Origin: Macrostomum lignano
Lineage: Eukaryota
Direction of reading: 5' to 3'
Assembly: GCA_002269645.1 (NCBI GenBank)
Contig: NIVC01002845.1
Span: 1,278 to 65,277, forward strand
DNA length: 64,000 nt
A model generated the notes under the pieces. The model made no database searches, was not told the origin of the DNA, and saw only the letters and a program-made list of their open reading frames with translations. Both the position numbers and the translations under genes were made by a program. This document shows positions 20,134-60,500 of the stretch, one piece after another (position 1 is the stretch's first letter; each line of letters opens with the position of its first letter).

Positions 20134-23100
20134 TCAGTTAACGTTTTTAATAGATACATGTAAATAGCTCACAGCCCATTTAAAAGCAAGTGGAGGCCCA
20201 AATATTGTCCAATAAATGGATTTTAGAAAGTCAAATCTAGTTGTCTTCCGCAGGGCTTCCTCACACAGTTGTAAAATCGTCTCCTTGTTACTCTCGAACG
20301 GGTTTTTCCCTTTGCGAGCTTCTGCGATGATCTCTGCAGACTCTTTGGCCTCCTGCAGTAGCTTAGTCCGATTTTCCCAGCCAGGACGTTTATGGGTCTC
20401 TTCCATTTTAATAAGATGGTCCACGTACTCCCCCACGCTTAACGGGTATTGGCGCAGAGCCATCTGCTCAAGTGACTGCAGGCATTGGTGAATTGTCACA
20501 ATATTGTAGGACAGCTCATCGAAAGTTTTGTCAATATCTGCTTTTATTCTTAATAAAAGACCTCTAGTCTCGCAAATTAGATCAATTCTTACTCCAAACT
20601 CTTTAGCAATTTCCTCCACAGTCACGGTTTTCACGGTTTCGCATTCTTCAAAGCAATATTCGCTGTTGCAATGCTCAGACGAAACGCAATTTTTCGAACA
20701 AACAATGCAGCAGCCGCTAGAGTCCATGACGGAGCACAAGGCGCTGTCTTTCTGACTGCATCTGTCATGACAAGTTCTTCGGCATGTCATGCAGTTCGTG
20801 GCAAACTGATCATGGGGCAGTTTAACCTCTCGAACTTCAGAGGACCTGACTTCGCATGCCATACTTTTCTCTCTGCGTAGAATGTACTTGCCACAAGAGC
20901 CAACTAGTTTGACATACTCCGCCAGATCGCTTAGCTTTTGTAGGTCTGACTGGACGCTTAACTTCAGTTTCTCCATGCAGACTTCCATCGATCTGCGATT
21001 TCTCAGAGTCTCTCGGGTGCTGAGCAATGAGACCCCATCGTGGCTGCTTTCGAGCTCGTCAAAGAGTTCTTGATAGTTGTCATTACTTTGATCCCACTCC
21101 AATTGTGTGGCTTTCAGATGAGGCTGCGAGCTCTTAGATTTTCTTCTTTTAGTTCCAGTCTTTCTACGGCTCGCTTCGGGGCCCCCAGACTCTGCATTGT
21201 TGGCGTACAACACAGCATTGTTGAATCTTATATAGGTTTCGCAAGGCACTTTGTCTGCTTTCAAGGCAGCCAGGGCCTGAGGTTCTTCGCTATCGGCGAA
21301 TGTAAAGACAGGATAAATGATGGGCTCCACGTCCTTTCCAAAAAGAGATAGTGCTTGGTCAAAGATGTACCTCTGCGTTGCGTTCAGTCGGTTTTGGGAA
21401 GCTCTCAAAACGAAACCGATTCCATGCAAAACCCCCGTCATTCCAGGAATATATTGCCCGTCTTCACCAAGTACTTTCGCTATTTTCATAATATTAATTT
21501 TATCCTGAGCCGGACCCCGAGTGTCCCCGAATCCCGGCGTGTCAATGATGGTGAGAGGGCAGTCCATTGCACTTCTGTGACTGTCCTCCGTGCCTCCTGT
21601 GTCCACAGGAAACAGTGTGTACACGGACACGTTAGCAGTCTGCGAATGAGCCTGGCCTGCAGCTGCGCTTTTATGACGACTTTCGAGCTGTCCAACTAGT
21701 TTCAGTCTGAAATTGTCATCGAACTGTACCCTGTAAAAAGCATTTGCAATCCCATTGATTAGGGTGCTCTTGCCTGTTCCTGTCTCACCAATTAGTAGCA
21801 GGAACTTCGGTGGCCCTCCGCCTGCATTCCGGTTGCCGACTTCGAAAGAGTTGGGACAGATGCAACTCTGAGAGCACTTGCATTCTGGTGATGGAATCTG
21901 CCGAACCCTTAACTGAAAAATATTCCCAGCAAAGGTTTCTCTTTTCTGAGCTGGAGTCGGATTGTCTTCGCAAAAGTTCTGCAGAACAAATTCTGAGCAG
22001 TTCAACGCAGGCTCAGTGGTAAAACTGATCTGCTCGCTGGGCTCAGATTCTCCGAGTTCTGTCACGGCAGTGACATACGCTTTGTGAGGAGTTCCCGCAT
22101 ACAGAGAGCTTACAGTAATGCTGTTGGTCTCAGTTGATTCTCTGTGATATGGTAGTAAGTCAGCCTCCCGTTGTCTAAGAACATAGACTACATATCCGTT
22201 CGATGCATTTGGTTCGGCTTTCCAAGAAAACTTGGCTGTGTTTTCATCCACTTCTGAGCACTGCAGCTCAGTTGGTGGTTTTGGCAGTTCCGTTTCAGTC
22301 CATGCAAAGTCTTTGTAACACTTTATTTGCAACTTGACAGTTTGTTGGTCATGTGGAGAGCCTTCAATAACTGCTACCGCAGCCGATCCACGATTTTGTT
22401 GAAGAAATCTCACTGCCCTGTCCAAATCTCTCCGGTAGCTGCGGTAATCTTCCGATTCGATCCAAGTTTTTCCTACTTCCTCCGCACACGTTGGCTGCGG
22501 CAAGTACTGTGGAAAATGTGATCTTGGTGCCTGGACCTCAAACAAAAGTTTGTAATCGGATCTGTTTGCGACGAATAACTCATCCTTTTCTCTTTCATTC
22601 AGAACGCGAGCACCGTTGTCTGAGAGAACACGGGCGGAATGCTGCAGCGCCATGCACTCTCTTTCTCTGTTTCTCAACCACATCAATAGCTGTTGAGGTG
22701 AGGCTCCGCATTCGTCTTTCTGACGCGAAATGAGCTCGGAAATCTCTCTACTTACATCTCCTGTTTGACGCGCCCTGGGCAAAATTGACATCAGCTGGTC
22801 TCTAAAGCGGGTCCGGTATGCCTGCACCCGATCTCTAAACGTGGCCAACACTTCGCACTGCATTCGCCACGGCGTGTCTTCAAGCTCCTTAATCTTGTCA
22901 TCGGCAGCGTTTATTATGTCGTCTAGCAGCTGGCAGTAATTTCCGGCTTCGTTCAAGCATTCTTCACTGATGCCTCTCATCAGTTTCTGATCTTTTCCTC
23001 CGATTTTGCTGAGAGGCGTGAGATACACCTGGACCGGAGAGCCGGCGTTTTCGCTCTTGAAGCTCTGCACACAACCGAAGGCCTCCCTGAGTGTGAGCGG

Positions 23101-23754
23101 AGGCGGTTCCAGCTTGAAGTCGCCATAGTAACGGCATCGAATACTCTCTGTCTCCGTGGCGTCATTCTTTGAGTGCTCTGCCTGCAGTTGACCAGAAACT
23201 TCGAAAAGGCTCTTCAGTTTAGACACCTGGCCTCTGAATGAGCCTGAAATCCCAGTCTTGCTTTCACTTTCTTGCTTCTCTCGCTCAAACACAAGAAACG
23301 CCCTGCCGCCGTACTGGATCCCGGTCACAACGTGCGTGGCTGATTCGTCATCGAGAAATTGCGGGTATTCAACTTCAGGACCCAGGTGCAGCTCCTTGAA
23401 CTCAGTCAAGGTTTTGTATGCAAATACGAGACTCTCTGAGTTGACTCGAGTCAGTTTCTCAGTGAGGTACTTTCCTGAGCCTTCCACTTCGGCGGAACCG
23501 CACAGAAAGCTGAGTTTTAAATCGGCGCTCATCTCTAGCTTTTTTGCTCTGTCGGAAAAGCTGGACTGTGATTCAATGCTGATTGCCTGACTCACATTGG
23601 GCCTGGTGACGGTCATTTCGTCGGTTGTCTTCCGAGACCAGAGCTTGGGACCCGTCAGGTATTTGCCTGTTTGAGCATCGTACAGGGTTCCGAGCGATGC
23701 AGGTCCTCCTATGTACGGGATTGACAGACTTTGATTCGCAACGTCTGTCGTCAT
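20134..23754 (-). CDS. Intronless ~1206-aa fusion: stonustoxin/verrucotoxin-like pore-forming-toxin domain, FN3, AIG1/septin-like P-loop GTPase, Cys-rich region and coiled coil
   Basis: N-terminus MTTDV...GGPASLGTLYDAQTGKYLTG and ATHVVTGIQYGGRAFLVF, CRYYGDF, PVQVYLTPL match stonustoxin-family motifs. FN3: PKPPTELQCSEVDENTAKFSW...AYVTAVTELGESEPS. GTPase: G1 GETGTGKS, G3 DTPG, G4-like FTFAD. Cys cluster CMTCRRTCHDRC...CIVCSKNC. ATG 23754 chosen by homology and the acceptor-like TTGCAG just upstream; the ORF track extends to 23844. Confidence 0.85.
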   Translation of the reverse strand: MTTDVANQSLSIPYIGGPASLGTLYDAQTGKYLTGPKLWSRKTTDEMTVTRPNVSQAISIESQSSFSDRAKKLEMSADLKLSFLCGSAEVEGSGKYLTEKLTRVNSESLVFAYKTLTEFKELHLGPEVEYPQFLDDESATHVVTGIQYGGRAFLVFEREKQESESKTGISGSFRGQVSKLKSLFEVSGQLQAEHSKNDATETESIRCRYYGDFKLEPPPLTLREAFGCVQSFKSENAGSPVQVYLTPLSKIGGKDQKLMRGISEECLNEAGNYCQLLDDIINAADDKIKELEDTPWRMQCEVLATFRDRVQAYRTRFRDQLMSILPRARQTGDVSREISELISRQKDECGASPQQLLMWLRNRERECMALQHSARVLSDNGARVLNEREKDELFVANRSDYKLLFEVQAPRSHFPQYLPQPTCAEEVGKTWIESEDYRSYRRDLDRAVRFLQQNRGSAAVAVIEGSPHDQQTVKLQIKCYKDFAWTETELPKPPTELQCSEVDENTAKFSWKAEPNASNGYVVYVLRQREADLLPYHRESTETNSITVSSLYAGTPHKAYVTAVTELGESEPSEQISFTTEPALNCSEFVLQNFCEDNPTPAQKRETFAGNIFQLRVRQIPSPECKCSQSCICPNSFEVGNRNAGGGPPKFLLLIGETGTGKSTLINGIANAFYRVQFDDNFRLKLVGQLESRHKSAAAGQAHSQTANVSVYTLFPVDTGGTEDSHRSAMDCPLTIIDTPGFGDTRGPAQDKINIMKIAKVLGEDGQYIPGMTGVLHGIGFVLRASQNRLNATQRYIFDQALSLFGKDVEPIIYPVFTFADSEEPQALAALKADKVPCETYIRFNNAVLYANNAESGGPEASRRKTGTKRRKSKSSQPHLKATQLEWDQSNDNYQELFDELESSHDGVSLLSTRETLRNRRSMEVCMEKLKLSVQSDLQKLSDLAEYVKLVGSCGKYILRREKSMACEVRSSEVREVKLPHDQFATNCMTCRRTCHDRCSQKDSALCSVMDSSGCCIVCSKNCVSSEHCNSEYCFEECETVKTVTVEEIAKEFGVRIDLICETRGLLLRIKADIDKTFDELSYNIVTIHQCLQSLEQMALRQYPLSVGEYVDHLIKMEETHKRPGWENRTKLLQEAKESAEIIAEARKGKNPFESNKETILQLCEEALRKTTRFDFLKSIYWTIFGPPLAFKWAVSYLHVSIKNVN

Positions 23755-24731
23755 TTCTCGTGATGCGAGCGCCGCTCTCTGCAATAATAATATTATGACG
23801 AGTTTTTGCTCCAAAGTACCATGCAATCTTATATCAAGGAGCACTAAAAGTTACCGTTGAATCAGGACGCAACACTTGCAAATATCATTCAAACAATTTC
23901 GCAATATGTTGTTTGATCTGTGGCGAGCAGTCCAGGTCCTATAGCTAAGAGAGGGACAGCGAGAGACGAGAAGGGAGCATTTTGAAGGTAGAGATCAGCT
24001 AATCCGCAGATTAACTAACCCGCTGCCACCAGCCCGTGCGTCCTGGCTCACCAAACCGGGACTTTCGAAATCGGGCTTCCGACTAGAGGGGGCTTTGCAC
24101 TTACTAGTGTCTTTTTGCTGTCAATCTCGACGTCATAGCCGATGATAAGGGAGGGGACTCTGCTGGGACTTGATCGCATTGGCCATGCAGGTACAGAGGG
24201 GACTTGTGCAGGGGATTCTTGCGGTGGCGAGTCCATTGCAGGGTGGCTACATGTACTAATACATTGCTAAATACGAGGGATTGTACTTTTGACCCTCAAC
24301 GCGCCAACCAGCCTCTCGTAGCGCTGATGATAGGCTAACTCGAACTTCAGAGAACGCATGATTCATTAACCCGAGCCGCTTGGCGAATCTAGAGTGCACA
24401 GAGTACATGTACATCTCTAGCGTATGATTCTGCACTATTGGCAATATTGCTAACTGATTTGATAGACTGATCGACTGAGAACTACAGTTAGTTATTCCAA
24501 GGCTACTTCAAGTCCTTATAATAAAAAAATTCGACTTTTCATTGCCTACTTTGGGACAAGACTGAATATTGCTTAATTGCGCCTTAATTTCATCCTGGCT
24601 TAGTCACCCTCCAGAGACCAGCTTCGCCCTTCCAGGCAAGCGGCTATTTTATTGCCTTTACTGTGTACTTTATGAATTTTATCCAGCACAATGGCACGCA
24701 TCTACATTGGCTGATGTGTAGCCCCTAAATG

Positions 24732-39096: not shown

Positions 39097-41196
39097 TTAG
39101 CTATTCATGACTTCATATATTTTAGCTACACCAGTGAGCTCTTTTCTGACTCTTTTTTCATTAGTAGCATATCCTATCTTGTGTATTTGATTGCTATTTA
39201 AGAGGTATTGACAGAAGTATTTTTTCCTGATCTCTTCAGTTTGTGGACATTCGGTCAAGTAGTGTAGAATGTCAGAACCATTTCGCGCTCCACACATTTT
39301 ACATGGTTCTTGAGAAAAAAAGTTGGGTGTAATCTCGCATTTCAGTTTTAGGAGGGTTGTTAAGAATTTTTTGTTTCTAAATGTACATGGAAAGAAATCT
39401 GAAAGGTCGGGCCTGCAGATTTTTTTGTAGAGATAGGCGTTTTTGTAGAGTTTAATATGTTGCTGATTCTCTAGCTTTTGGCTAAGTTCTCTTTCTCTGT
39501 GTATCTTGAGGTGCTTTTTCACTAGGTATTTCTCGTTATTAAAGCTTTGGGAAAGTTTATCTTCAGTTAGTGCTTTTAGGTCTATACTTTCTAGTTTCTT
39601 TAGTACATTCATTTTCCATGGATTTTTTTGGCCGGTGTTTGAGTAGAAAATTTCTAGAGTCGTTTGGCAGAGTTTTTTGTGTCTAATCTTCAGCCAGTAG
39701 ATGAGGTAGGTTTTAGCGATTCGTTGAGAGATTGGAGTAGGCCTAAGCTCAAGTTCTGATGATACCACACTGTTGCTAGCAAATTTTGGTAGATTGAGAA
39801 GATATTTGTAGAATTTCAGCTGAATATTATCAATAGCTTTTGTATCAGACATGGTAGCCAGAGGGCCCCAGAGCTCACAACCATAAGTGATAACGGGGGT
39901 AACAAGCGCGTCAAATAGTCTGCGAATGAGTGTGATGTCTAGGGACGTATTCTTTACCCTATGGAGTAGGGAAAACATGGCTGTATATCCCTGCTTAGTT
40001 TGGTGTTCAATACATTTTTTAAAGCTGTTTTTTGGTTCAAAAATAATTCCCAGGTATTTAAATTCATTTACTTCCTCTATTTCTTGGTTGTCGTAGTATA
40101 TTTTTGTAGCAATGCTTTCTGTGTCGTTTTTTTGTCTGGTATTGCCCTGCATGAACTTTGTTTTGCTTGCGTTTACTTTCAAGTAATTTTGTTTGCAGTA
40201 ATTTTCCATAGTCGTAAATGTGTCTTGAAGTTCGTCTTTGTTTTTAGCTAGAATGGCTTGATCGTCTGCAAAGAGTAGGATGAGTGGGAAAGCAGATCTC
40301 GTAAGAGAGCGCCTAGCGCTAGAGAGTTCAAGATATTCAACAATGTCGTCAATATATAGTTCAAAAAGGATGGTAGAGAGAGGGTTGCCTTGAAGAACAC
40401 CTTTAGATATTGGGATTGGCTGGGTTTCATCATCATCATCATCATTTTTTAGAATGAAGCAGGCATTTTTATGCATGTTTTTGATAAGTTCCGTCATTTG
40501 ACCTTTAATACCCTGGTTATCCGTTTTGTGCCAAAGGGTTGGTTGATTTAAGCTATCGAAGGCTTTTTCATAGTCAACAAATCCAATAAAGAGTTCTTCT
40601 TTGTTGTAGATGGATTGGTTTATAATGTTGTAAAGATTAAAACATTGGTCGATTGTGCTGTGATTGGGCTTGAAACCGTATTGGTATTTTGATATAAGAT
40701 TGTTTGCATATGCTAGGTTTTCGAGTCTGGATTTAATAATTTGGCAAAAGAGCTTGCCAAGAATTGGTTGAATGCAGATTCCTCTGTAATTGTTGGGGTC
40801 GGCACTGCTGCCTTTGTTTTTATAAATCGGATGAAGTGTATTTGTTATCCAACTAGTTGGGAAGGTTCCTTGTTTGAGTGCTTCGTTGAAAAGTGAGCAT
40901 AGGAGGTCAGCAAGTTCGTTCTCGAGGTATTTGAGTGTTTCTACATATACTTTATCGTGCCCAGGTGCTTTGTCGGTTTTGAGCTTTTTAATATGTTTTA
41001 TAACTTCTTCTTTGGTGAATGGGGCATTGAAATCCTCTAAATCAGCCAGAATAGGGTTGTCAAGGTGAAGATTGTATGATAGTCTAATGCTGCTGTCTTG
41101 TTCAGTTACAAGATTTTGAAAGTGTATGATAAATTTTTCATCAATTGTTACTCTGTTGTTTGAGGGATTTGGTGTTTTTAATAAGATTATTTTAGA
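39097..41196 (-). mobile_element. 5'-truncated non-LTR retrotransposon (LINE) with reverse transcriptase and C-terminal Cys-His motif
   Basis: Hand translation shows one frame open from ~41196 to the stop at 39097 (~699 codons): KAPGHD, DPNNYRGI, QYGFKPNHST, FVDYEKAFDS, GVLQGNPLS, LFADD, FKYLG, CKMCG…HYLTEC. No endonuclease domain. Clade (L2/CR1/RTE-X-like) not determined. Confidence 0.93.
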
Positions 41197-46431: not shown

Positions 46432-51266
<4,835 letters not shown>

Positions 51267-51394
51267 GGCGCGAACCTCGGACCTTCGACTTCATGCTTGT
51301 GTTGTCTGAAAGCTGAATGGTCATTCCGTGTTCAGCTTGAAAACTGCTGTTGTCATTGTCAATCTAGACTTGTTTGGCGTCTCCGATTTTCCCT

Positions 51395-52340
51395 TAGCAG
51401 AATCGCCCTTGACAAAGCAGTTCTACGGAATCCCCTACAGAATCGCCCTTGACAGAATCACCCTTGACAGAATCGCCCTTTACAGAATCGCCCTTTACAG
51501 AATTGCCCTTTACAGAATCGCCCTTTACAGAATCGCACTTGACAGAATCGCCCTTGACAGAATCGCACTTGACAGAATCGCCCTTGACAGAATCGCCCTT
51601 GACAGAATCGCCCTTGACAGAATCGCCCTTGACAGAATCGCCCTTGACAGAATCGCCCTTGACAGAATCGCCCTTGACAGAATCGCCCTTGACAGAATCG
51701 CCCTTGACAGAATCGCCCTTGACAGAATCGCACTTGACAGAATCGCACTTGACAGAATCGCCCTTGACAGAATCGCACTTGACAGAATCGCACTTGACAG
51801 AATCGCCCTTGACAGAATCGCACTTGACTGAATCGCCCTTGACAGAATCGCACTTGACAGAATCGCACTTGACAGAATCGCCCTTGACAGAATCGCACTT
51901 GACAGAATCGCCCTTGACAGAATCGCACTTGACAGAATCGCCCTTGACAGAATCGCCCTTGACAGAATCGCCCTTGACAGAATCGCCCTTGACCGAATGG
52001 CCCTACAGAATCGCCCTTGACAGAATCGCCTTTGACCGAATCGCCCTTGACAGAATCGCCTTTGACAGAATCGCCCTACAGAATCGCCCTTGACAGCATC
52101 GCCATTTACAGAATCGCCCTTGACAGCATCGCCCTTTACAGAATCGCCGTTGACAAAGCAGTTCTACGGAATCGCCCTACAGAATCGCCCTTGACAAAGC
52201 AGCCCTACGGAATCGCCCTACAAAATCGCCTTACATAATCACCCTACGAAATCGCTTTTGACAGAATTGCCCTACAAAATCGCCTTTGACAAAATCGCCC
52301 TTGACAAAATCGCCCTTGACAGAATCGCCCTGACAGAATC
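51395..52340. repeat. Minisatellite, 15 bp unit GACAGAATCGCCCTT, downstream of the DDX41 stop
   Basis: About 55 copies with degenerate edges. Confidence 0.97.
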
Positions 52341-52846
52341 GCAATTCACATTGAAATCGCATTCACAGCCTGACGCTTACTGCCATTAAATATTGGGCAG
52401 TTGCAAATGTTGGCAAAGTGTAAGTGCATATTCTGATTTATGTAAAATATACCGAACGTGTAAATTATGTTACGCCAATAAAAGTGCAAATTAAATTGCA
52501 TCTCACTGGTCCACCCAGTACTTTGTTTTGCTCCTTTATTGCATGTACAATTCAGCGCCTGTCTTCTTGTATAGGGAGTTCCGGGGCAGCAGGGAAGCTA
52601 GAAGTTTGTCATGCCAAGTAGCCGAGCACCAATGCAGTGCAAATTGTGAAACCTAGACTAGACTGACTTAGTGTTGCTGAGTTTGATCTAATTTACTATC
52701 GGAAAGGCCAACTCAGTCAAGACAGCGAGACACAGGTTGGGTTATAATTTACGACTCAGTGTAACAATTAGTATAACAACAACTTGGAATCGAATTTGCT
52801 AAGCGAACAATTTTTTGACGCAGCTGCTCTCTCGATCGGTTCAACC

Positions 52847-54188
52847 ATGGCTGCCTTGAAGTTCTTCGATTTTGCCTTTGTTGCTATGGTGACCGGGATG
52901 CTGATTATTCTATCCGATTATTCCGCTGCTAAGGAGGCGACGTGTAAGTTTCATGTGCTAATACGATCGGTGCGACATGAGGTATCGGGACTGTGCCTTT
53001 AGTCTCGGCTGTGAGGTCTTAAGAAAGTCACTCCGCTTTGAACTCTTCAAAGCAAGCAATCACTCGTCACCCCTGCAGTCAATGCAACGCTGAATTTCCG
53101 TCCTGCCATGCCTTGAAGCACTGACGAAATTCTTTAATACCCCCGAACGTGGTGGTCCCTGACGCCTGACGACCACGACTTCTTGGAACGGGTCATGACT
53201 TAAGTGACGAATCATGTGGTTTCTCAGTATGACCCTGAAACAAAAAGACAGCAGTGGATGGCTATCGCCAGATTTACATGTAACCTCGATCAGGAAAGGC
53301 GCGCACGCCAAAGACGAAGGTTAGTGTCATGTTAATCGCTTTTTGACTCCAACGGACTTGTAGTGCCGTCACAAGTCTGTGTCTGAAGGTCAAACTGTTG
53401 GCAGTACTTCTACTCGTGCTGCTCCATTTGGCCCTACAGAATTTCCTGTAATTTGGGCTCACCTCGTCAGATTTTGGGGCTCCGCATGCTTCAATTCTTA
53501 TGTTGAATAGTCAGCCTGATGAAGCATGCAATTGCCAAACTGAACCGCCCTTTCCCAGATGAAGCCGAGATGGACATCATGGAATCCTTCGCTGTGCAGG
53601 AAGATGTCCACCACTTGCCGGATATGAATCATTTGCATCATCAGCATCATCATCATCGTCACGACGATGAAGACGATCTCGATGAGCACTTGCATCTGGA
53701 CGCTCCGGCGCCTACGGAGGCGGAGACTGCGGCGTCGACGACGCCGGCCACCGCAGCGCCCAGCGTCCCGAAATTTCGATCGCGATTCGGTGGTTTCTCC
53801 GGCACCGGCAGTTACAAGAAGAAGCTGTCGCGCAGGTTAGCCGCGACCTTTCACCTGCGAATTCACTACGCTCACGCAGGCCCCTGACTTTCTATAATCG
53901 TCAGGCAGATTGAGCCTAATTGGGGTTGGACCTCATAGATATGATCGAATCCCAGGACAACCTTCTGGCCAACTGTTGTACACACAAGCCCCCCAAATGA
54001 ATGTGGTTACCTCTGAGCTGTTCCGACCCTGTGCAAATTCCCTTCATGAGTACGGAGTAATGAATATGCTCGATCGTGAATGTGAAAACCTGACCAGCAT
54101 CAACATCCGATATCATTCCCGCAGACGCTGCCGCAAGTACAGGTTCACCGGCCGTAAACTGGTCTGCGTTTCCTACTTCAAAAACTAA
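52847..54188 (+). CDS. Secreted prepropeptide A (145 aa). Exons 52847-52943, 53559-53835, 54125-54188: signal peptide, acidic His-rich pro-region, cationic Cys-loop peptide
   Basis: MAALKFFDFAFVAMVTGMLIILSDYSAA|KEAT-Y-EAEMDIMESFAVQEDVHHLPDMNHLHHQHHHHRHDDEDDLDEHLHLDAPAPTEAETAASTTPATAAPSVPKFRSR FGGFSGTGSYKKKLSRRRCRKYRFTGRKLVCVSYFKN*. Donors GTAAGT and GTTAGC, pyrimidine-rich acceptors, phases 1 and 2, AATAAA at 54269. Confidence 0.8.
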
Positions 54189-54882
54189 ACCAACTATCAC
54201 TAGTGCAGTTGAACTTTTACGAGTATTGACAGGAGCTGCTGACTGTGTTCTGAAATGCTTCAAGCTTCAATAAATATACAACACATGTACAATTGCGTTC
54301 AAGCATATGCAGCAGTTTTTGTGTAACAATATCCTGTCCGAAATTTGTTTTGAGTGCGACCATGCAGTAATAGGACTGTAATTACAAGTCACTAACGCAA
54401 TTTTGTTAAAAAGAGACGATGTTTTTTTGCTAAAATGTATAATTTAAACCGTTTTGAGCAGATTGGCCTCATGAAAAAGCGAAACAATGAAATAACTATA
54501 AATACCCATGGGTTTCCTCTGCCTAGCAAGCGGCATCAGATAGCAGAGGAGCGCCATGGGGGCAGCAAAGCGTTCACCAAACGCTTAAAGATGGCTTGAA
54601 GAAGATAGCCTGGACTGAACAAGCCGCGGGTCGGCGTCCTTGATGTTGAGGACTCGGGGGGAAAAAGCGTTGATCAAATCATCGATTTCTGCTGGATTTT
54701 CCACGATAGCTTTCCCCATTCATCTTTACATAGAGTTTGGCTGTTTGTGACTGTTGCCATGGCAACTTCTGGATAGAAATGAATACATAAAATACCTGCG
54801 GGTCTGAGCTGAAGCCAGCGAATTTTTGGGACTGAAAGCCTCTGGGAATCTATGCTGATTAAGGACTGGAATTCACGTCGGA

Positions 54883-57800
54883 ATGTTCTGGCTAGCCGGT
54901 AAGCAAATGCTGCTGATGTGCCTAACTTGTCTGTCTTTACCTGCTGACTGCCTGCTGAGTGCCTGCTGACTGCCTGCTGACTGCCTGTTGACTGCCTGTT
55001 GACTGCCTGCTGACTGCCTGTTGAGGGTCTGCTGAGTGCCTGTTGGATGCCTGCATGCAAGGACTTCTTGCAGATGTTCTTGCCTGCATGTTGACTACCT
55101 GGGAGGGCCTGCTGAGTGCCTGCTGAGTGCCTGCTGACCTGCTGACTACCTGCTGACTGCCTGCTGAGTGCCTGCTGACTACCTTCTGAGTGCCTGCTGA
55201 CTACCTGCTGAGTGCCTGCTGACTACCTTCTGAGTGCCTGCTGACTACCTTCTGAGTGCCTGCTGACTACCTTCTGAGTGCCTGCTGACTACCTTCTGAG
55301 TGCCTGCTGACTACCTTCTGAGTGCCTGCTGACTACCTGCTGAGTGCCTGCTGAGTGCCTGCTGAGTGCCTGTTGACTGCCTGCTGACTGCCTGCTGACT
55401 GCCTGCTGAGTGCCTGCTGACTGCCTGCTGAGTGCCTGCTGAGTGCCTGCTGACTGCCTGCTGAGTGCCTGCTGACTACCTGCTGAGTGCCTGCTGAGTG
55501 CCTGCTGAGTGCCTGCTGACTGCCTGCTGAGTGCCTGCTGACTACCTGCTGAGTGCCTGCTGAGTGCCTGCTGACTGCCTGCTGAGTGCCTGCTGAGTGC
55601 CTGCTGAGTGCCTGCTGAGTGCCTGCTGACTGCCTTGGCAACGAGCTCATCAATTCACTCTGCGCTACCGCCGCCAGTGCCGCTTTTTCTTCTCCTGGCC
55701 GAGTCCGCAAGCCAGCTGCTGGCAGCGGAAGCCCCAGAGCGGCTGTTCAAACTCTCCAAGCCAGTCCAGCTGGACAACTCAAGCAGCAACGAGCTGCTCA
55801 GCTTCTCAGAGCTCAACATGTCGCGCATTTACTGCGCCCATCGCTGCAGCCAGCTGTCCGGGTGCGTCGCCGCCGTCCTCAGCGGCAACCGCAGCCTCTG
55901 CCGGGTGCTGCGGCTGCTGCAGTCGCCTGGACCGGCCGGCAGTCACGTGACCAGGCAACTGGGAGCCGAGCCTGGCGATGAGCTGTGGCTGGCAGAAGAT
56001 TTTGGAGAAAGGATTGAGCAGCTGCGAATGGCTGTCGAGCCAAGTGAGATTTTGTAAATTTTATAGACGCTCAGGTTTAAATCTCAGGTTTTATTGCGTT
56101 ACATGATAAAAAATGTAACCATTGAGAACGATTTCTGAACCTACTTCTCTGGAGTTCTGAGAGCAACGGCCAATATGCTTAATCTGAGGTTGGGGAGGAT
56201 GTGGAGAGCAGCTTGAGGGTGTGTGAGGGGGCAGAGCAGCAGCTCGATGGTCACAGCCATGAGGGCCAACCCACAAGGCACAGGGAGTGCACATGCCTTA
56301 AGATTAGAAAGTCAGGACCGCTGTACACCCTGCGTGAGTGTGTGTGTGAGCTGTGGCGCTCAGGACTTTGACTTCGTGTTGCAAATGATATGCGCTCTGT
56401 CTGTACACATTATACTACGGAACTGACGCGAGTTAATTTTCATCGTCATCATTTTCAGCTGCCTCGAGCTCGCTTTTTACGGCGGTGAACGGCTCTGAAA
56501 TCAAGTTCAATGGTGGGTAAAACGGCTCTGAAATCAAGTGCAATGATGGGTAAAACAGCTCTGAAATCAAGTGCAATGGTGGGTAAAACGGCTCTGAAAT
56601 CAAGTGCAATGGTGGGTAAAACAGCTCTGAAATCAAGTGCAATGGTGGGTAAAACGGCTCTGAAATCAAGTGCAATGGTGGGTAAAACGGCTCTGAAATC
56701 AAGTTCAATGGTGGGTAAAACAGCTCTGAAATCAAATGCAATGGTGGGTAAAACAGCTCTGAAATCAAGTGCAATGGTGGGTAAAACGGCTCTGAAATCA
56801 AGTGCAATGGTGGGTTGATGGTGATAATTTTCACTTGCAGTGAGCGGCACCGGACGGAACGGCTCTGTCCAGCAGGCCGTGGTGACCGTCGCCGGCTGCT
56901 ACCGGATCGAAGCGTTGGGCGCCAAGGGCGGCTCTTCAGGGGGCAAAGCAGCCAACAAAGGCGCCTGGATGGCCGGCAACTTCAGCCTCGCCGCGGGCAC
57001 GCACCTGTCCATTGTGGTCGGGCAGAGCGGCCAACCCGGAGTTTCCAATGGCGGTGGGGCCGGGGGCGGCGGCTCCTTCGTTTATGGCACCGGCGACGGG
57101 TTTCTGTACCTGGCTGCTGGGGGCAGCGGCGGCTCGTCTTGTCCTTTCCTTTGTAAGCTGCAGCACACATGCAGACTGCAGCACACATGCAGACTGCAGC
57201 ACACATGCAGACTGCAGCACACATGCAGACTGCAGCACACATGCAGACTGCAGCACACATGCAGACTGCAGCACACATGCAGACTGCAGCAAACATGTAG
57301 ACTGCAGCACACATGCAGACTGCAGCACACATGCAGACTGCAGCACACATGCAGACTGCAGCACACATGCAGACTACAGCTCACATGCAGACTACAGCAC
57401 ACATGCAGACTGCAGCACACATGCAGACTGCAGCACACATGCAGACTGCAGCACACATGCAGACTGCAGCACACATGCAGACTGCAGCACACATGCAGAC
57501 TGCAGCACACATGCAGACTGCAGCACACATGCAGACTGCAGCACACATGCAGACTGCAGCACACATGCAGACTGCAGCACACATGCAGACTGCAGCACGC
57601 ACGCAGACCACAACACCCAGCGTACAAATGCGATAGCTTTCTCATTGTCAGACAAGTACACACGGTACTTTGAGAGCCATCCCTCTGGAGTTGAGCCTGA
57701 GTCCTTCTGGCTCGATTTTTACACTCTGCCAAGACTCAGGCAACCATGATTGTCCCCTTCGCCCCTGCAGCCTATTCGGGACAAGCTGGAGAGAACGGCA

Positions 57801-58240
57801 CCGGCACGCACCCCGACAAGAACCCTCCGGGAGGCGTTCTCGGCCAGCCCGGGCCTTCGAACTCTGCTACCAGTGGCTACTACGGCGGCCCAGGTGCCGG
57901 CTGGCTGAGCGGCGCCAACTCGACTCGACGTGAGGACAGGTGCGGCGAGGGCGGCGGCGGCCGCGCCGAAGGATGGGTCGGCGGCCGCGGCTACGCCGGC
58001 ACCGACGGCGGCTTTGGTGGTGGCGGCGGCGGTGCCTTTGGCTTCAAAAGCAGCTGCGGTGCCGGCGGCGGAGGCGGTGGCTACAGCGGCGGAGCGGGGG
58101 CTGCGACCTACGAAAACACTGGCGGCGGCGGCGGCTCGTTCTGCGCCGGCAGTGGCTGCGTTGGCATCTCGAACGACGGGCGCAACGGCGAGGAGGGACT
58201 CGTGGCGATCCGGCAGCTGAGCACCGGGAGCTGCGCCTGA
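54883..58240 (+). CDS. Secreted PAN/Apple-like + ALK/LTK-type glycine-rich domain protein (~387 aa). Exons 54883-54898, 55678-56043, 56841-57152, 57771-58240
   Basis: Spliced signal peptide MFWLA-V-PLFLLLAESASQLLA; PAN-like SRIYCAHRCSQLSGCVAAVLSGNRSLCRVL; glycine-rich domain motifs [58 protein letters not shown]. All introns phase 1; no TM or kinase; AATAAA at 58391. Confidence 0.85.
54940..55632. repeat. Intronic 11 bp minisatellite CTGCTGAGTGC/CTGCTGACTGC
   Basis: Fills intron 54899-55677. Confidence 0.95.
56488..56815. repeat. Intronic 33 bp minisatellite GGCTCTGAAATCAAGTGCAATGGTGGGTAAAAC
   Basis: About 10 copies ending ~25 nt before the acceptor at 56840. Confidence 0.96.
57158..57600. 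repeat. Intronic 18 bp minisatellite CTGCAGCACACATGCAGA
   Basis: About 24 copies starting 5 nt after the donor GTAAG at 57153. Confidence 0.97.
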
Positions 58241-58931
58241 AGCCGCGGCTGCATGCCAGACTGCTGGCCAGACACGCGAAGATTAATGAGCATAAACCCA
58301 ACAAAGGTTATGTTAGTTAGCTTGTTTCTATCGTGCCCATTTTCATTTTTTAGGCGTTTTTTAAAGAGAAGACAACTCATAGAAAGAAAAAATAAACACC
58401 ATGTCAGCCATAATGTGAAAAATTTCTGAGATGTCAAGTCTCATGGGGGATTACTGAAATCCTGCGGCTGTTGGGGGGGGGAGATGCTGAGATGCCAAGA
58501 GTCAAGTGGAAGTTATTGGTTAGGGTTATGGTTAAGCCATGGCCTATAGAGCGGCTTTTGAAGCCAAAAGCTCACAGGGGATGCTGATGTCTTAGGCTAG
58601 ACAGCTGGCTTTCGGTGATTGATGCTTTTTTGCTTTAAACATCATTTTCCATGCATATCTCTCCATGACTCTTAGCATAGTAACAAATCTAGTGTACTAC
58701 ATGTACTAGAAGTAACTTTGAAGTAGTTATCTTCTTCAGAGAAATACACATTTCAAATTAGTTTATGTATATTTGTTATTTTAATATCTGAACAGCTAAG
58801 ATGAACGTTGTCCATATTTTATTTGAAAAATAATTTCAGTGAGAAAACCAAGATAATAAATAATTATATAAGATAATATTTATTACTTATTTTAAGATAA
58901 TAACAAACTTGTATGACAGAACCCGTCACTT

Positions 58932-59652
58932 CTAGCTGGAATACTTGGCGCAGTACAAGCCGTGCTTGCCAAACTTGTAGTGCAGGCACCTCCTGAAATC
59001 GGCACACGGCAGTTGAAATTTATATTTATATTTTGATTGCTGTGTTATAAACAAGGAGAAGGGATAATTTTGGCCCTACCTGTGCGGCCCAGAGACGAAG
59101 TGACCCTTGCGACCGGCGGCTCCAAAGCCGCGCTTGTCAATCAGGTCATCCAGCCAGTCGGGCGTGTCCTCGTCTGCAAAACCGCGGTTGAGACTTTCAA
59201 GTACATTCAATTTCGAATGCAGTTGTAGAGGAAAAAATTACTCTTGGGGCAGGGGGTCGGCAAACTGGGAGAGAAAAGAGATAGGAGAAAGGAGAGATGA
59301 GGGAAGGTGAAGAGACGAGACGAGACGAGAGGAGGAATGAAATCGATGAAGGGAGAGGAGAGCTGAGAAGAGACGCAAACTTTGAGCGGGCCGGATTGCT
59401 TTTGTGAAGGTTCATAAGGACCCCGAGGGCCGGATAGAGAGGCTTTGCGGGTCGCATGCGGCATTGAAGACCTGGAATTCGTTTCCAGGTGGAATCGTAA
59501 AAGAGGTCCTTAGCTTCAGCTTCCATTTGTTAGAGCTATCATTATGTCTCAGACTCACCGTCGGAGCTCTCGGCATCGTCGTAAGCCGGAGCAGCGAGTG
59601 TGGCTGCTACCAGCGCCAGAAGCAGCAGACCGTAGAGTGGCAGTTTGCTCAT
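58932..59652 (-). CDS. Secreted prepropeptide B (82 aa). Exons 59652-59559, 59173-59080, 58992-58932: signal peptide, acidic spacer, KR, 36-aa cationic Cys-loop peptide
   Basis: MSKLPLYGLLLLALVAATLA|APAYDDAESSD-D-EDTPDWLDDLIDKR GFGAAGRKGHFVSGPH-R-RCLHYKFGKHGLYCAKYSS*. Donors GTGAGT and GTAGGG, acceptors TTTTGCAG and ATTTCAG, phases 1 and 2, AATAAA ~47 nt after the stop (58885-58880). Absent from the ORF track because the exons are short. Confidence 0.85.
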
Positions 59653-60500
59653 TTTGTGCGGAGTGCGTTGAAATTGTTAATCTGCCTTCAGCTTATAGAG
59701 CAGGTCTGAGAAGGGCCTCGCCTCATTTCTCAGCTAGAAACTGGAAGGCTTTTATATTTTATATATTTGAGTAGGGCAGAAATTAGCCTTGCCTCAGACA
59801 CGTGAATAGAGAAGAGAGCTGCTACGGCACGTGCTTCTGAAGGAGAGGCTGCTTGTTGTCAAGCCAAGTTCTCTTCTGTGTATTCAAGCTATTCGGCGTA
59901 TTGTCAGCCTCTCTCCCTCATCACCCATAGAGCCTTCATGCATAGACAATGGCTGGCCTGTCATAAGCAATTCTGCAGGCGACCAATGTGCTCAACCGAG
60001 TTTAGAATAATTATTAAACTCACGCAGGGCCCGAACTCCATAGTCTCTGGTTGTTATTTTTTCATCTCGCTTCGATTGCGGCCCCCATCATTGTAGGGGG
60101 CTGCATCTCACCTGCAGAGTTTGCATTGAGGTGGCTGCTGCTTGAGCAGTGATCTTGTACAGAGCTATAACGATTGCTCCTTTTTTTAGCAGCAGAGTTT
60201 CGCATGAAGAAAACTGTTATGGCTCGCGATTCGTAAGTTATCGAATAGAATCAAGTAAAAGGGGCCTCCCGTCATTTTGTTGCTGAGTCATTCCCTGATT
60301 TATATGTACATTTAAATTAAAAAACGTTCTATCATATTTGTACATGTGCTTCCAATTTGAAGCTTTATGGGCAGACAAACTAAAACGCAAAAATTGATTT
60401 AAAAAGCAAATCATTCTCTGATTTATTTTTTTAAAGTTTGGCTAAAATTGAATTTGAATTTTGGCTAAAATTTCGACTTTCATAGACATCCCTCGATTGT

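What the first reader, a model, noticed from the sequence alone, without database searches (positions are those of the whole stretch)
58932..59652. Peptide gene B: compact 82-aa precursor invisible to the ORF track
Exons of 94, 94 and 61 nt assemble into a textbook precursor: TLA|AP signal cleavage, a D/E-rich spacer, a canonical KR site, then a 36-mer with 7 Arg/Lys, 4 His and one Cys pair. An AATAAA lies ~47 nt after the stop. The internal GFGAA-G-RK and RR sites allow alternative processing into a short amidated GFGAAamide plus the cyclic CLHYKFGKHGLYC peptide, which would be neuropeptide-like.
Basis: partly seen in the sequence, partly recalled or inferred. Interest (0 to 1): 0.72.

Follow-up and report, generated by a model that had tools for sequence, protein, structure and literature searches.

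The report
Orphan secreted peptide gene, Macrostomum lignano
This is a real three-exon gene of the flatworm Macrostomum lignano, already in GenBank as a "hypothetical protein"; it encodes a small secreted precursor whose acidic front half is probably cut off to release a 4 kDa basic peptide, and it has no known relatives and no tested function.

Summary
On the minus strand, exons 59652-59559, 59173-59080 and 58992-58932 (94/94/61 nt, GT..AG introns) join into an 82-aa ORF.

The ORF reads: signal peptide, acidic spacer (net -9), KR, then a basic 36-mer (net +7; 3 Arg, 4 Lys, 4 His, 2 Cys).

The product is 100% identical to GenBank PAA54900.1/PAA78047.1 (BOX15_Mlig024524g1/g2) of Macrostomum lignano. 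That annotation was built from RNA-seq, so the splice pattern has transcript support.

A diverged second copy (Mlig024363g1) keeps all splice sites and the whole 36-mer. It differs by 2 amino acids, both outside the 36-mer, and 4 silent changes (omega about 0.15).

No relative was found in 5.8 billion proteins, in an exhaustive scan of 1.84 billion representatives, in Pfam or in the PDB.

Function is untested and I found no published expression pattern. My best reading is a convertase-processed exocrine or host-defence-type cationic hairpin peptide (about 0.4). A neuropeptide precursor (GFGAA-amide plus a cyclic 18-mer) is the main rival (about 0.3), but its internal cleavage motifs are no more than chance gives (P about 0.12).

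The AATAAA at +47 is not conserved in the second copy. Overall this is an ordinary, already annotated orphan peptide gene of modest interest.

The parts
59559..59652 (-). Exon 1 (94 nt): ATG at 59652, signal peptide MSKLPLYGLLLLALVAATLA, and the start of the acidic spacer. Followed by donor GTGAGT at 59558.
   Evidence: Identical in the GenBank gene model. Donor kept in second copy L003. Only clean signal-peptide exon in the window.
59174..59558 (-). Intron 1 (385 nt, GT..AG) with a CT-rich tract. The 109- and 85-codon minus-strand ORFs listed here are spurious.
   Evidence: 11 substitutions and 16 gap columns versus L003.
59080..59173 (-). Exon 2 (94 nt): rest of the acidic spacer (DEDTPDWLDDLID), the KR46 convertase site, then GFGAAGRKGHFVSGPH and the first two bases of the Arg63 codon, which exon 3 completes.
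   Evidence: One substitution versus L003 (P36A in the spacer).
58993..59079 (-). Intron 2 (87 nt, GTAGGG..TTTCAG), AT-rich (GC 0.36).
   Evidence: 15% substituted versus L003.
58932..58992 (-). Exon 3 (61 nt including TAG): the last base of the Arg63 codon, then RCLHYKFGKHGLYCAKYSS, which carries the Cys65/Cys77 pair.
   Evidence: Two silent changes versus L003. Predicted beta-hairpin.
59653..59770 (-). Putative core promoter and 5'UTR: ATATATAAAATATAAAAG about 100-115 nt upstream of the ATG and CTATAAG about 40-46 nt upstream. The 50 nt before the ATG are identical in the second copy.
   Evidence: sequence comparison only; the transcription start was not determined.
58760..58931 (-). 3' flank with candidate poly(A) signals: AATAAA at +47 (58879-58884) and +108 (58818-58823), and ATTAAA at +146 (58780-58785). 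Only the last is shared with the second copy.

Best explanation
This is a lineage-restricted (orphan) protein-coding gene of Macrostomum lignano, Mlig024524. It makes an 82-aa prepropeptide.

Proposed mechanism:
1. The N-terminal 20-21 residues direct the product into the secretory pathway and are removed (inferred).
2. The 24-residue Asp/Glu-rich spacer (net -9 with its KR) neutralises and chaperones the basic C-terminal part until a subtilisin-like proprotein convertase cuts after Lys45-Arg46 (inferred).
3. The released product is a ~4.0 kDa peptide with pI ~10 and net charge +7, rich in Gly, His and aromatic residues.
4. Its C-terminal half (CLHYKFGKHGLYC) forms a beta-hairpin closed by a disulfide. 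One face is aromatic (L20, Y22, F24, Y30) and the other is basic (H21, K23, H27).

I think it most likely acts outside the cell as an exocrine or host-defence-type, membrane- or surface-active cationic peptide from gland or epidermal cells, not as a neuronal messenger.

Shown: gene structure, transcription (through the RNA-seq-based annotation), conservation in the second copy, and absence of relatives. Inferred: all processing steps, the disulfide, the fold, the producing cell type and the activity.
For: - **Gene is real and transcribed:**
- **Constraint:** the second copy keeps frame and splice sites. It has 0 replacement and 2 silent changes in the 36-mer, and both replacements lie in the signal peptide or spacer. 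Omega is 0.15. Exons are 2.4% substituted against 8.5% for all non-coding sequence (Fisher p = 3e-4).
- **Charge-balanced design:** propiece -9.2, 36-mer +7.1, pI 10.15. From established knowledge, this is the classic layout of defensin, frog-skin and other host-defence peptide precursors.
- **Structure:** AlphaFold2 predicts a hairpin over the Cys-pair region in both runs (pLDDT 73-82 there). In the precursor model the RR site lies inside strand 2, with Cys65 opposite Cys77.
- **Amphipathic register:**
- **Internal dibasic sites:** not above chance.
Against: - No expression site, peptide mass or activity is known. The complete supplementary table of in-situ-tested transcripts in Brand et al. 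2020 does not contain the gene, and no paper text mentions it.
- Acidic spacers and KR sites are equally typical of neuropeptide precursors.
- The G-RK and RR motifs are exactly what a neuroendocrine cell would cut.
- The two AlphaFold2 runs disagree on hairpin register and have low overall confidence (mean pLDDT 61 and 64).
- The constraint estimate rests on only six substitutions.
- Intron 1 (2.9% substituted) is no more diverged than the exons.
Confidence: 0.4

Rival explanations
1. It is a neuropeptide or peptide-hormone precursor. In neurons or neurosecretory cells, PC2-type convertases would cut at KR46, RK54 and RR64. Carboxypeptidase and amidating enzyme would then give GFGAA-NH2, GHFVSGPH and a disulfide-cyclised CLHYKFGKHGLYCAKYSS. 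One or more of these would act on a receptor.
For: - Three dibasic sites, one preceded by Gly, which is the amidation donor.
- A short precursor with an acidic spacer and a cyclic peptide at the extreme C-terminus. From my knowledge, this layout resembles somatostatin, allatostatin-C, urotensin II and MCH precursors.
- The entire post-KR region is invariant between the two copies.
- Flatworm neuropeptide precursors are often lineage-specific and invisible to homology searches, so having no hits is compatible.
Against: - The arrangement of dibasic sites and the G-dibasic motif occurs in 12% of shuffles of the 36-mer.
- RK is a rarely used site (own knowledge).
- GFGAA-amide and a 13-residue ring match no described family. 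Ring size and motif differ from somatostatin (C-x10-C, FWKT), allatostatin-C (C-x6-C), MCH (C-x8-C) and the luqin precursor motif (C-x10-C) (own knowledge).
- No Pfam hit.
- The near-exact charge compensation between the propiece and the whole 36-mer is better explained if the 36-mer is the product.
Confidence: 0.3
2. It is a secreted small protein with another role: a gland product used in adhesion or release, mucus, a rhabdite or structural matrix, or a seminal-fluid or reproductive peptide. The Gly/His/Tyr/Lys-rich basic domain would bind surfaces, metals or partner tissues rather than kill microbes or signal.
For: - Composition of the 36-mer: 7 Gly, 4 His, 3 Tyr, 3 Phe and 7 Lys/Arg.
- Orphan status and a small secreted product are typical of flatworm gland and reproductive transcripts. 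Many such untitled transcripts are reported for M. lignano prostate, antrum and pharyngeal glands in the tables seen.
Against: - The gene is not among the in-situ-tested reproductive or gland transcripts in the complete table. The larger positional tables there were truncated, so this is weak evidence.
- An acidic, convertase-removed propiece is unusual for structural or adhesive proteins (own knowledge).
Confidence: 0.22
3. It is not a functional peptide gene: a transcribed but non-functional or mis-annotated short ORF, such as transcriptional noise assembled into a model.
For: - Very short CDS.
- No homologues anywhere.
- The evidence of constraint rests on six substitutions, and the exon-versus-intron contrast alone is not significant (p = 0.12).
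Against: - The frame, start, stop and all four splice sites are intact in a copy whose flanks are 5.5% (upstream) and 14% (downstream) diverged and full of indels.
- GC3 is 0.76.
- A coherent signal/propiece/KR/basic-peptide design is unlikely in noise.
- The model passed the strict 'coregenes' filter for GenBank.
Confidence: 0.05

Closest known systems
GenBank PAA54900.1 / PAA78047.1 (BOX15_Mlig024524g1/g2) and PAA80608.1 (BOX15_Mlig024363g1), hypothetical proteins of Macrostomum lignano
   Same: The first two are 100% identical over all 82 residues, with the same 721-bp gene span. The window is contig NIVC01002845.1 positions 1278-65277. The third is the diverged second copy, with 2 amino-acid differences.
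   Different: Nothing differs for the first two: it is the same gene. None carries a function, domain or name.
Amphibian skin host-defence peptide precursors (brevinin / esculentin / ranatuerin type with a C-terminal 'Rana box')
   Same: The order of parts matches: a ~20-residue signal peptide, an Asp/Glu-rich spacer ending in KR, and a cationic mature peptide with a single C-terminal disulfide loop. Charges of the spacer and the mature peptide compensate (architecture, charges; the comparison itself rests on my knowledge).
   Different: There is no sequence similarity. The loop is C-x11-C plus a 5-residue tail rather than C-x5-C. The N-terminal half is Gly-rich and predicted disordered rather than an amphipathic helix. 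The phylum is different, so any likeness is convergent.
Single-disulfide beta-hairpin antimicrobial peptides (arenicin, thanatin, bactenecin, lactoferricin)
   Same: A cationic hairpin closed by one disulfide, with one aromatic/hydrophobic face and one basic face.
   Different: No homology. Arenicin-type peptides come from BRICHOS-domain precursors (own knowledge), which this is not. The hairpin register is uncertain and activity is untested.
C-terminal cyclic neuropeptides (somatostatin / allatostatin-C / urotensin II / MCH) and the Cys-pair tail of luqin-type precursors
   Same: A short precursor with a cyclic peptide at the extreme C-terminus, preceded by a dibasic site.
   Different: Ring size (11 residues between Cys) and ring sequence match none of them. 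There is no FWK[TY] core. No luqin-type RF/RY/RW-amide follows the signal peptide. No database similarity. The comparisons rest on my knowledge.

Membership tests
Convertase-processed secreted prepropeptide (generic class) | N-terminal signal peptide | tested here: inconclusive
   MSK + 16-residue hydrophobic core + small residues at -3/-1 (T-L-A|A). Mean Kyte-Doolittle score of the best 10/11-residue window is 2.8-2.9. GRAVY of residues 1-20 is 1.75. No dedicated predictor was available.
Convertase-processed secreted prepropeptide (generic class) | Dibasic cleavage site separating the pro-region from the product | tested here: met
   KR at residues 45-46 between the acidic spacer and the basic 36-mer, conserved in the second copy. 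Actual cleavage was not tested.
Convertase-processed secreted prepropeptide (generic class) | Transcribed and spliced as modelled | tested here: met
   An identical CDS is in the GenBank annotation of Mlig_3_7, which was built only from RNA-seq assemblies (PMC5730564). I did not see the reads themselves.
Cationic host-defence (antimicrobial) peptide | Net positive, amphipathic mature peptide with an anionic, charge-compensating propiece | tested here: met
   +7.1 against -9.2. An amphipathic hairpin is possible in the Cys19-Cys31 register.
Cationic host-defence (antimicrobial) peptide | Antimicrobial or membrane activity; expression in barrier or gland tissue or induction by infection | not testable with these tools
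   No expression or activity data were found.
Neuropeptide precursor | Peptides flanked by dibasic sites, with Gly as amide donor, beyond chance | tested here: inconclusive
   The motifs are present (KR, G-RK, RR), but 12% of shuffles of the 36-mer do as well.
Neuropeptide precursor | Similarity of the predicted peptide to a described neuropeptide family | tested here: not met
   No hit in Pfam at E<=10, in 5.8 billion proteins or in 1.84 billion representatives. Such short peptides are hard to detect, so this is a weak negative.
Neuropeptide precursor | Neuronal expression and detection of the processed peptides | not testable with these tools
   Needs in situ hybridisation and LC-MS/MS.
Frog-skin dermaseptin/brevinin precursor superfamily | Conserved signal-plus-spacer sequence shared by the family | tested here: not met
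   No similarity to any protein outside M. lignano. The resemblance is architectural only.

The most novel reading that the evidence does not exclude
The 36-mer could be a gene-encoded antimicrobial or host-defence peptide of a free-living flatworm: a new, homology-free family with a frog-skin-like precursor design that evolved convergently. The one planarian-immunity review I checked names no gene-encoded flatworm antimicrobial peptide; I did not read the later flatworm-immunity papers listed. An alternative novel reading is that it founds a new flatworm cyclic-neuropeptide family.
Probability: 0.3. Interest if true: 0.5.

Novelty: new member of a known kind. Interest (0 to 1): 0.3.

Why it matters
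The case shows that the first-stage reader can recover a correct multi-exon micro-gene from raw sequence. Biologically it is one of many small secreted orphan genes of a model flatworm.

If the product proved to be a defence peptide, it would give an entry point into flatworm humoral immunity, which is poorly known. M. lignano offers RNAi and transgenesis to follow that up.

If it proved to be a neuropeptide, it would add a lineage-specific cyclic peptide to the flatworm repertoire. Either result would be a modest advance, not a resolution of a long-standing question.

Tried and rejected
- **Paralogue in the window** ('peptide gene A' or a cluster): tblastn of the precursor and of each exon found only self-hits. 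A signal-peptide-exon scan found no second candidate; the other hits were minisatellite artefacts.
- **Homology:** word-indexed search of 5.8 billion proteins, exhaustive phmmer against 1.84 billion representatives, Pfam at E<=10 and PDB sequences at E<=10 (only a chance PHD-finger match, E=3). Nothing was found beyond the M. lignano copies.
- **Structure route:** Foldseek of the AlphaFold2 model against the PDB gave no match below E=0.19, so it is meaningless.
- **Literature:** no paper text holds the gene IDs or peptide strings. Supplements of four M. lignano papers had no hit and two papers have no held supplements. The large tables in Brand et al. 2020 were truncated, so their silence is uninformative; only the complete in-situ table is. 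Koziol et al. 2016 on flatworm neuropeptides is not held.
- **Annotation further upstream:** look-up through the 1206-aa SNTX-like ORF found no exact product on record.
- **RNA genes:** the Rfam and tRNA scans of the window were empty.
- **Rejected ideas:** luqin-type, somatostatin-type and natriuretic-type membership (ring size and motifs do not fit; memory-based leads only). The 109-codon ORF in intron 1 was also rejected as a gene.

Full report
**1. What is in the sequence.**

Read on the minus strand, positions 59652-58932 contain an ATG-initiated exon of 94 nt (59652-59559). It is followed by GTGAGT and a 385-nt intron ending TTTTGCAG.

A second exon of 94 nt follows (59173-59080). It is followed by GTAGGG and an 87-nt intron ending GATTTCAG. 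A last exon of 61 nt (58992-58932) ends in TAG.

The joined 249-nt CDS encodes MSKLPLYGLLLLALVAATLAAPAYDDAESSDDEDTPDWLDDLIDKRGFGAAGRKGHFVSGPHRRCLHYKFGKHGLYCAKYSS.

- The exons are 94/94/61 nt.
- There is a KR at residues 45-46.
- The following 36-mer has 3 Arg, 4 Lys, 4 His and two Cys 11 residues apart.
- An AATAAA starts 47 nt after the stop.

A mechanical ORF list shows only two minus-strand ORFs confined to intron 1, which are spurious. The gene is therefore hidden from an ORF track.

**2. Whose gene it is, and whether it is real.**

The product is 100% identical over its full length to GenBank PAA54900.1/PAA78047.1, 'hypothetical protein BOX15_Mlig024524g1/g2' of the free-living flatworm Macrostomum lignano.

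The gene occurs on two contigs of assembly GCA_002269645.1 with a span of exactly 721 bp. From the offsets, the window is NIVC01002845.1 positions 1278-65277.

The GenBank annotation of this assembly was produced only from RNA-seq evidence. It used StringTie/TACO genome-guided assembly plus the de novo transcriptome, with gene boundaries set from trans-splicing and poly(A) reads. It was then filtered to 'coregenes' (PMC5730564).

Internal evidence agrees:
- GC3 of the CDS is 0.76, while the introns have GC 0.49 and 0.36 and the 3' flank 0.26.
- In a scan of both strands of the window for Met-initiated signal-peptide-like segments followed by a GT[AG]AG donor, this exon is the only clean hit. 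The other hits were minisatellite translations.

**3. A second, diverged copy.**

M. lignano carries a further locus, Mlig024363g1 (PAA80608.1, contig NIVC01000573.1).

Against the window it has six substitutions in the 249-nt CDS. Two change amino acids: P5A in the signal peptide and P36A in the spacer. Four are silent. The 36-mer has no replacement and two silent changes.

All four splice sites are identical. Nei-Gojobori counting gives dN 0.011, dS 0.071 and omega 0.15.

Substitution rates versus this copy:

| Region | Substituted |
|---|---|
| Exons | 2.4% |
| Introns | 5.2% (plus 18 gap columns) |
| 600 nt upstream | 5.5% |
| 600 nt downstream | 14% |

Exons against all non-coding sequence give Fisher p = 3e-4. 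Exons against introns alone give p = 0.12. This is consistent with purifying selection but rests on few changes.

The 50 nt before the ATG are identical, and two TATA-like elements are kept (about -100 and -44).

The AT-rich ~110 nt that carries the AATAAA signals at +47 and +108 is replaced in the second copy. Only ATTAAA (+146 here, +170 there) is shared.

**4. No relatives.**

The following searches returned nothing beyond the M. lignano copies:
- A word-indexed HMMER search of 5.8 billion proteins at E<=1.
- An exhaustive phmmer pass over 1.84 billion cluster representatives at E<=0.001.
- Pfam at E<=10, for the precursor and for the 36-mer.
- PDB sequences at E<=10.

A 36-residue peptide at about 40% identity could not reach significance in databases of this size. 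'Orphan' here therefore means 'no detectable relative', not 'proven absent'. There is no paralogue in the window.

**5. Anatomy and likely processing.**

Residues 1-20/21 have a basic n-region (MSK), a 16-residue hydrophobic core and small residues at -3/-1 (T-L-A|A). They look like a signal peptide, but no predictor was available.

Residues 21-46 carry nine Asp and two Glu (net charge -9.2). The 36-mer has net charge +7.1 and pI 10.15. The precursor as a whole is thus nearly neutral.

AlphaFold2 without an alignment gives low overall confidence (mean pLDDT 61):
- It places a helix on DWLDDLIDK.
- It places a hairpin on residues 63-70/72-79, with Cys65 opposite Cys77, plus a weak third strand at 55-59.

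The 36-mer run alone (mean pLDDT 64) again gives a hairpin, with pLDDT 82 for residues 21-30. The register is shifted, however, and its first 18 residues are disordered.

A hairpin over the Cys pair is therefore the stable prediction. Its register and the third strand are not.

In the Cys-Cys register one face is L20, Y22, F24 and Y30, and the other is H21, K23, H27 and L29. That makes an amphipathic cationic hairpin. Foldseek found nothing meaningful.

**6. What it most likely does.**

Function is untested. No paper text contains the gene IDs or peptide strings.

Searchable supplements of four M. lignano papers had no hit, and two further papers had none held.

The one complete table that compiles in-situ-tested transcripts lacks the gene. 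The bigger tables in the same paper were truncated in storage.

I therefore weigh the design itself.

*Points favouring an exocrine or host-defence-type cationic peptide released whole:*
- The near-exact charge compensation between the spacer and the entire 36-mer.
- The Gly/His/aromatic-rich basic composition.
- The amphipathic single-disulfide hairpin.
- The position of RR inside a predicted strand.

From established knowledge, this is the design of frog-skin peptides, of defensin propieces and of hairpin antimicrobial peptides.

*Points favouring a neuropeptide precursor:*
- The three dibasic sites, with Gly before RK.
- The C-terminal cyclic peptide.

Shuffling the 36-mer weakens the neuropeptide case. 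It gives at least two dibasic pairs in 33% of trials, a G-dibasic motif in 22%, and both in 12%. RK is also a rarely used site (own knowledge), and neither predicted peptide resembles a described family.

My estimates are:

| Reading | Probability |
|---|---|
| Defence or exocrine cationic peptide | about 0.40 |
| Neuropeptide | about 0.30 |
| Other secreted role (adhesion, mucus, reproduction) | about 0.22 |
| No function | about 0.05 |

**7. Comparison with what is known, and novelty.**

As a gene model it is already known, as a GenBank hypothetical protein. As a peptide it belongs to the well-known class of signal / acidic propiece / KR / basic peptide precursors, but to no described family.

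It fails the one testable membership criterion (sequence similarity) both for the frog-skin superfamily and for the neuropeptide families. The likeness is one of working principle only.

The one review of planarian innate immunity that I checked names no gene-encoded flatworm antimicrobial peptide; I did not read the later flatworm-immunity papers listed. A demonstrated activity would therefore have some value.

Overall this is an ordinary orphan micro-gene. The first-stage observation is correct, its interpretation is reasonable but undecided, and it is of modest interest.

**8. Surroundings.**

The gene lies tail-to-tail with a plus-strand Gly-rich gene at 56.8-58.2 kb. That gene's first part matches the ALK/LTK glycine-rich domain, and it is interrupted by an 18-nt minisatellite.

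An annotated 130-aa gene and a DEAD-box helicase follow further down.

The window also holds an uninterrupted 1236-codon ORF combining a stonustoxin-type MACPF domain, fn3 and a P-loop GTPase. It also contains a reverse-transcriptase ORF and many minisatellites.

No tRNA or Rfam match occurs anywhere in the window. None of these features bears on the peptide gene.

Noticed in passing
window 20134-23844 (-): An uninterrupted 1236-codon ORF with Pfam hits to the stonustoxin-type MACPF/CDC domain, the stonustoxin helical domain, fn3 and a P-loop GTPase (AIG1/septin-like). This is an immune-effector-like architecture. The product read from the first ATG is not on record in the gene collection.
   Followed up: partly
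window 56840-58240 (+): Gly-rich coding segments. The first matches the ALK/LTK glycine-rich domain PF12810 (E=4e-6). They are split by an 18-nt minisatellite at 57158-57608. The gene is convergent with the peptide gene, ending about 690 nt from its stop.
   Followed up: partly
window 58806-58926 versus L003 10728-10840: The first ~110 nt after the stop codon, which carry both AATAAA signals, are an AT-rich segment replaced by unrelated sequence in the second gene copy. Collinearity resumes at ATCTTGGTTT.
   Followed up: yes
window 46800-57610: A dense series of minisatellites (periods 11, 15, 18, 21, 30-33 nt; up to 63 copies). They generate many long spurious ORFs on both strands.
   Followed up: no
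window 39097-40497 (-): A 466-codon ORF with a reverse-transcriptase domain (RVT_1), in the AT-rich 36-46 kb block. It is probably a retroelement remnant.
   Followed up: no
window ~53268-54188 (+): An annotated 130-aa gene (168 aa at the duplicate locus L001) that includes a His/Asp-rich ORF at 53519-53887 with no Pfam match.
   Followed up: no
L001 (NIVC01000709.1) versus the window: The gene and 600 nt of flank on each side are virtually identical on two contigs; only a few single-base indels differ. This reflects assembly redundancy or very recent duplication in this polyploid genome. L003 is the truly diverged copy.
   Followed up: partly
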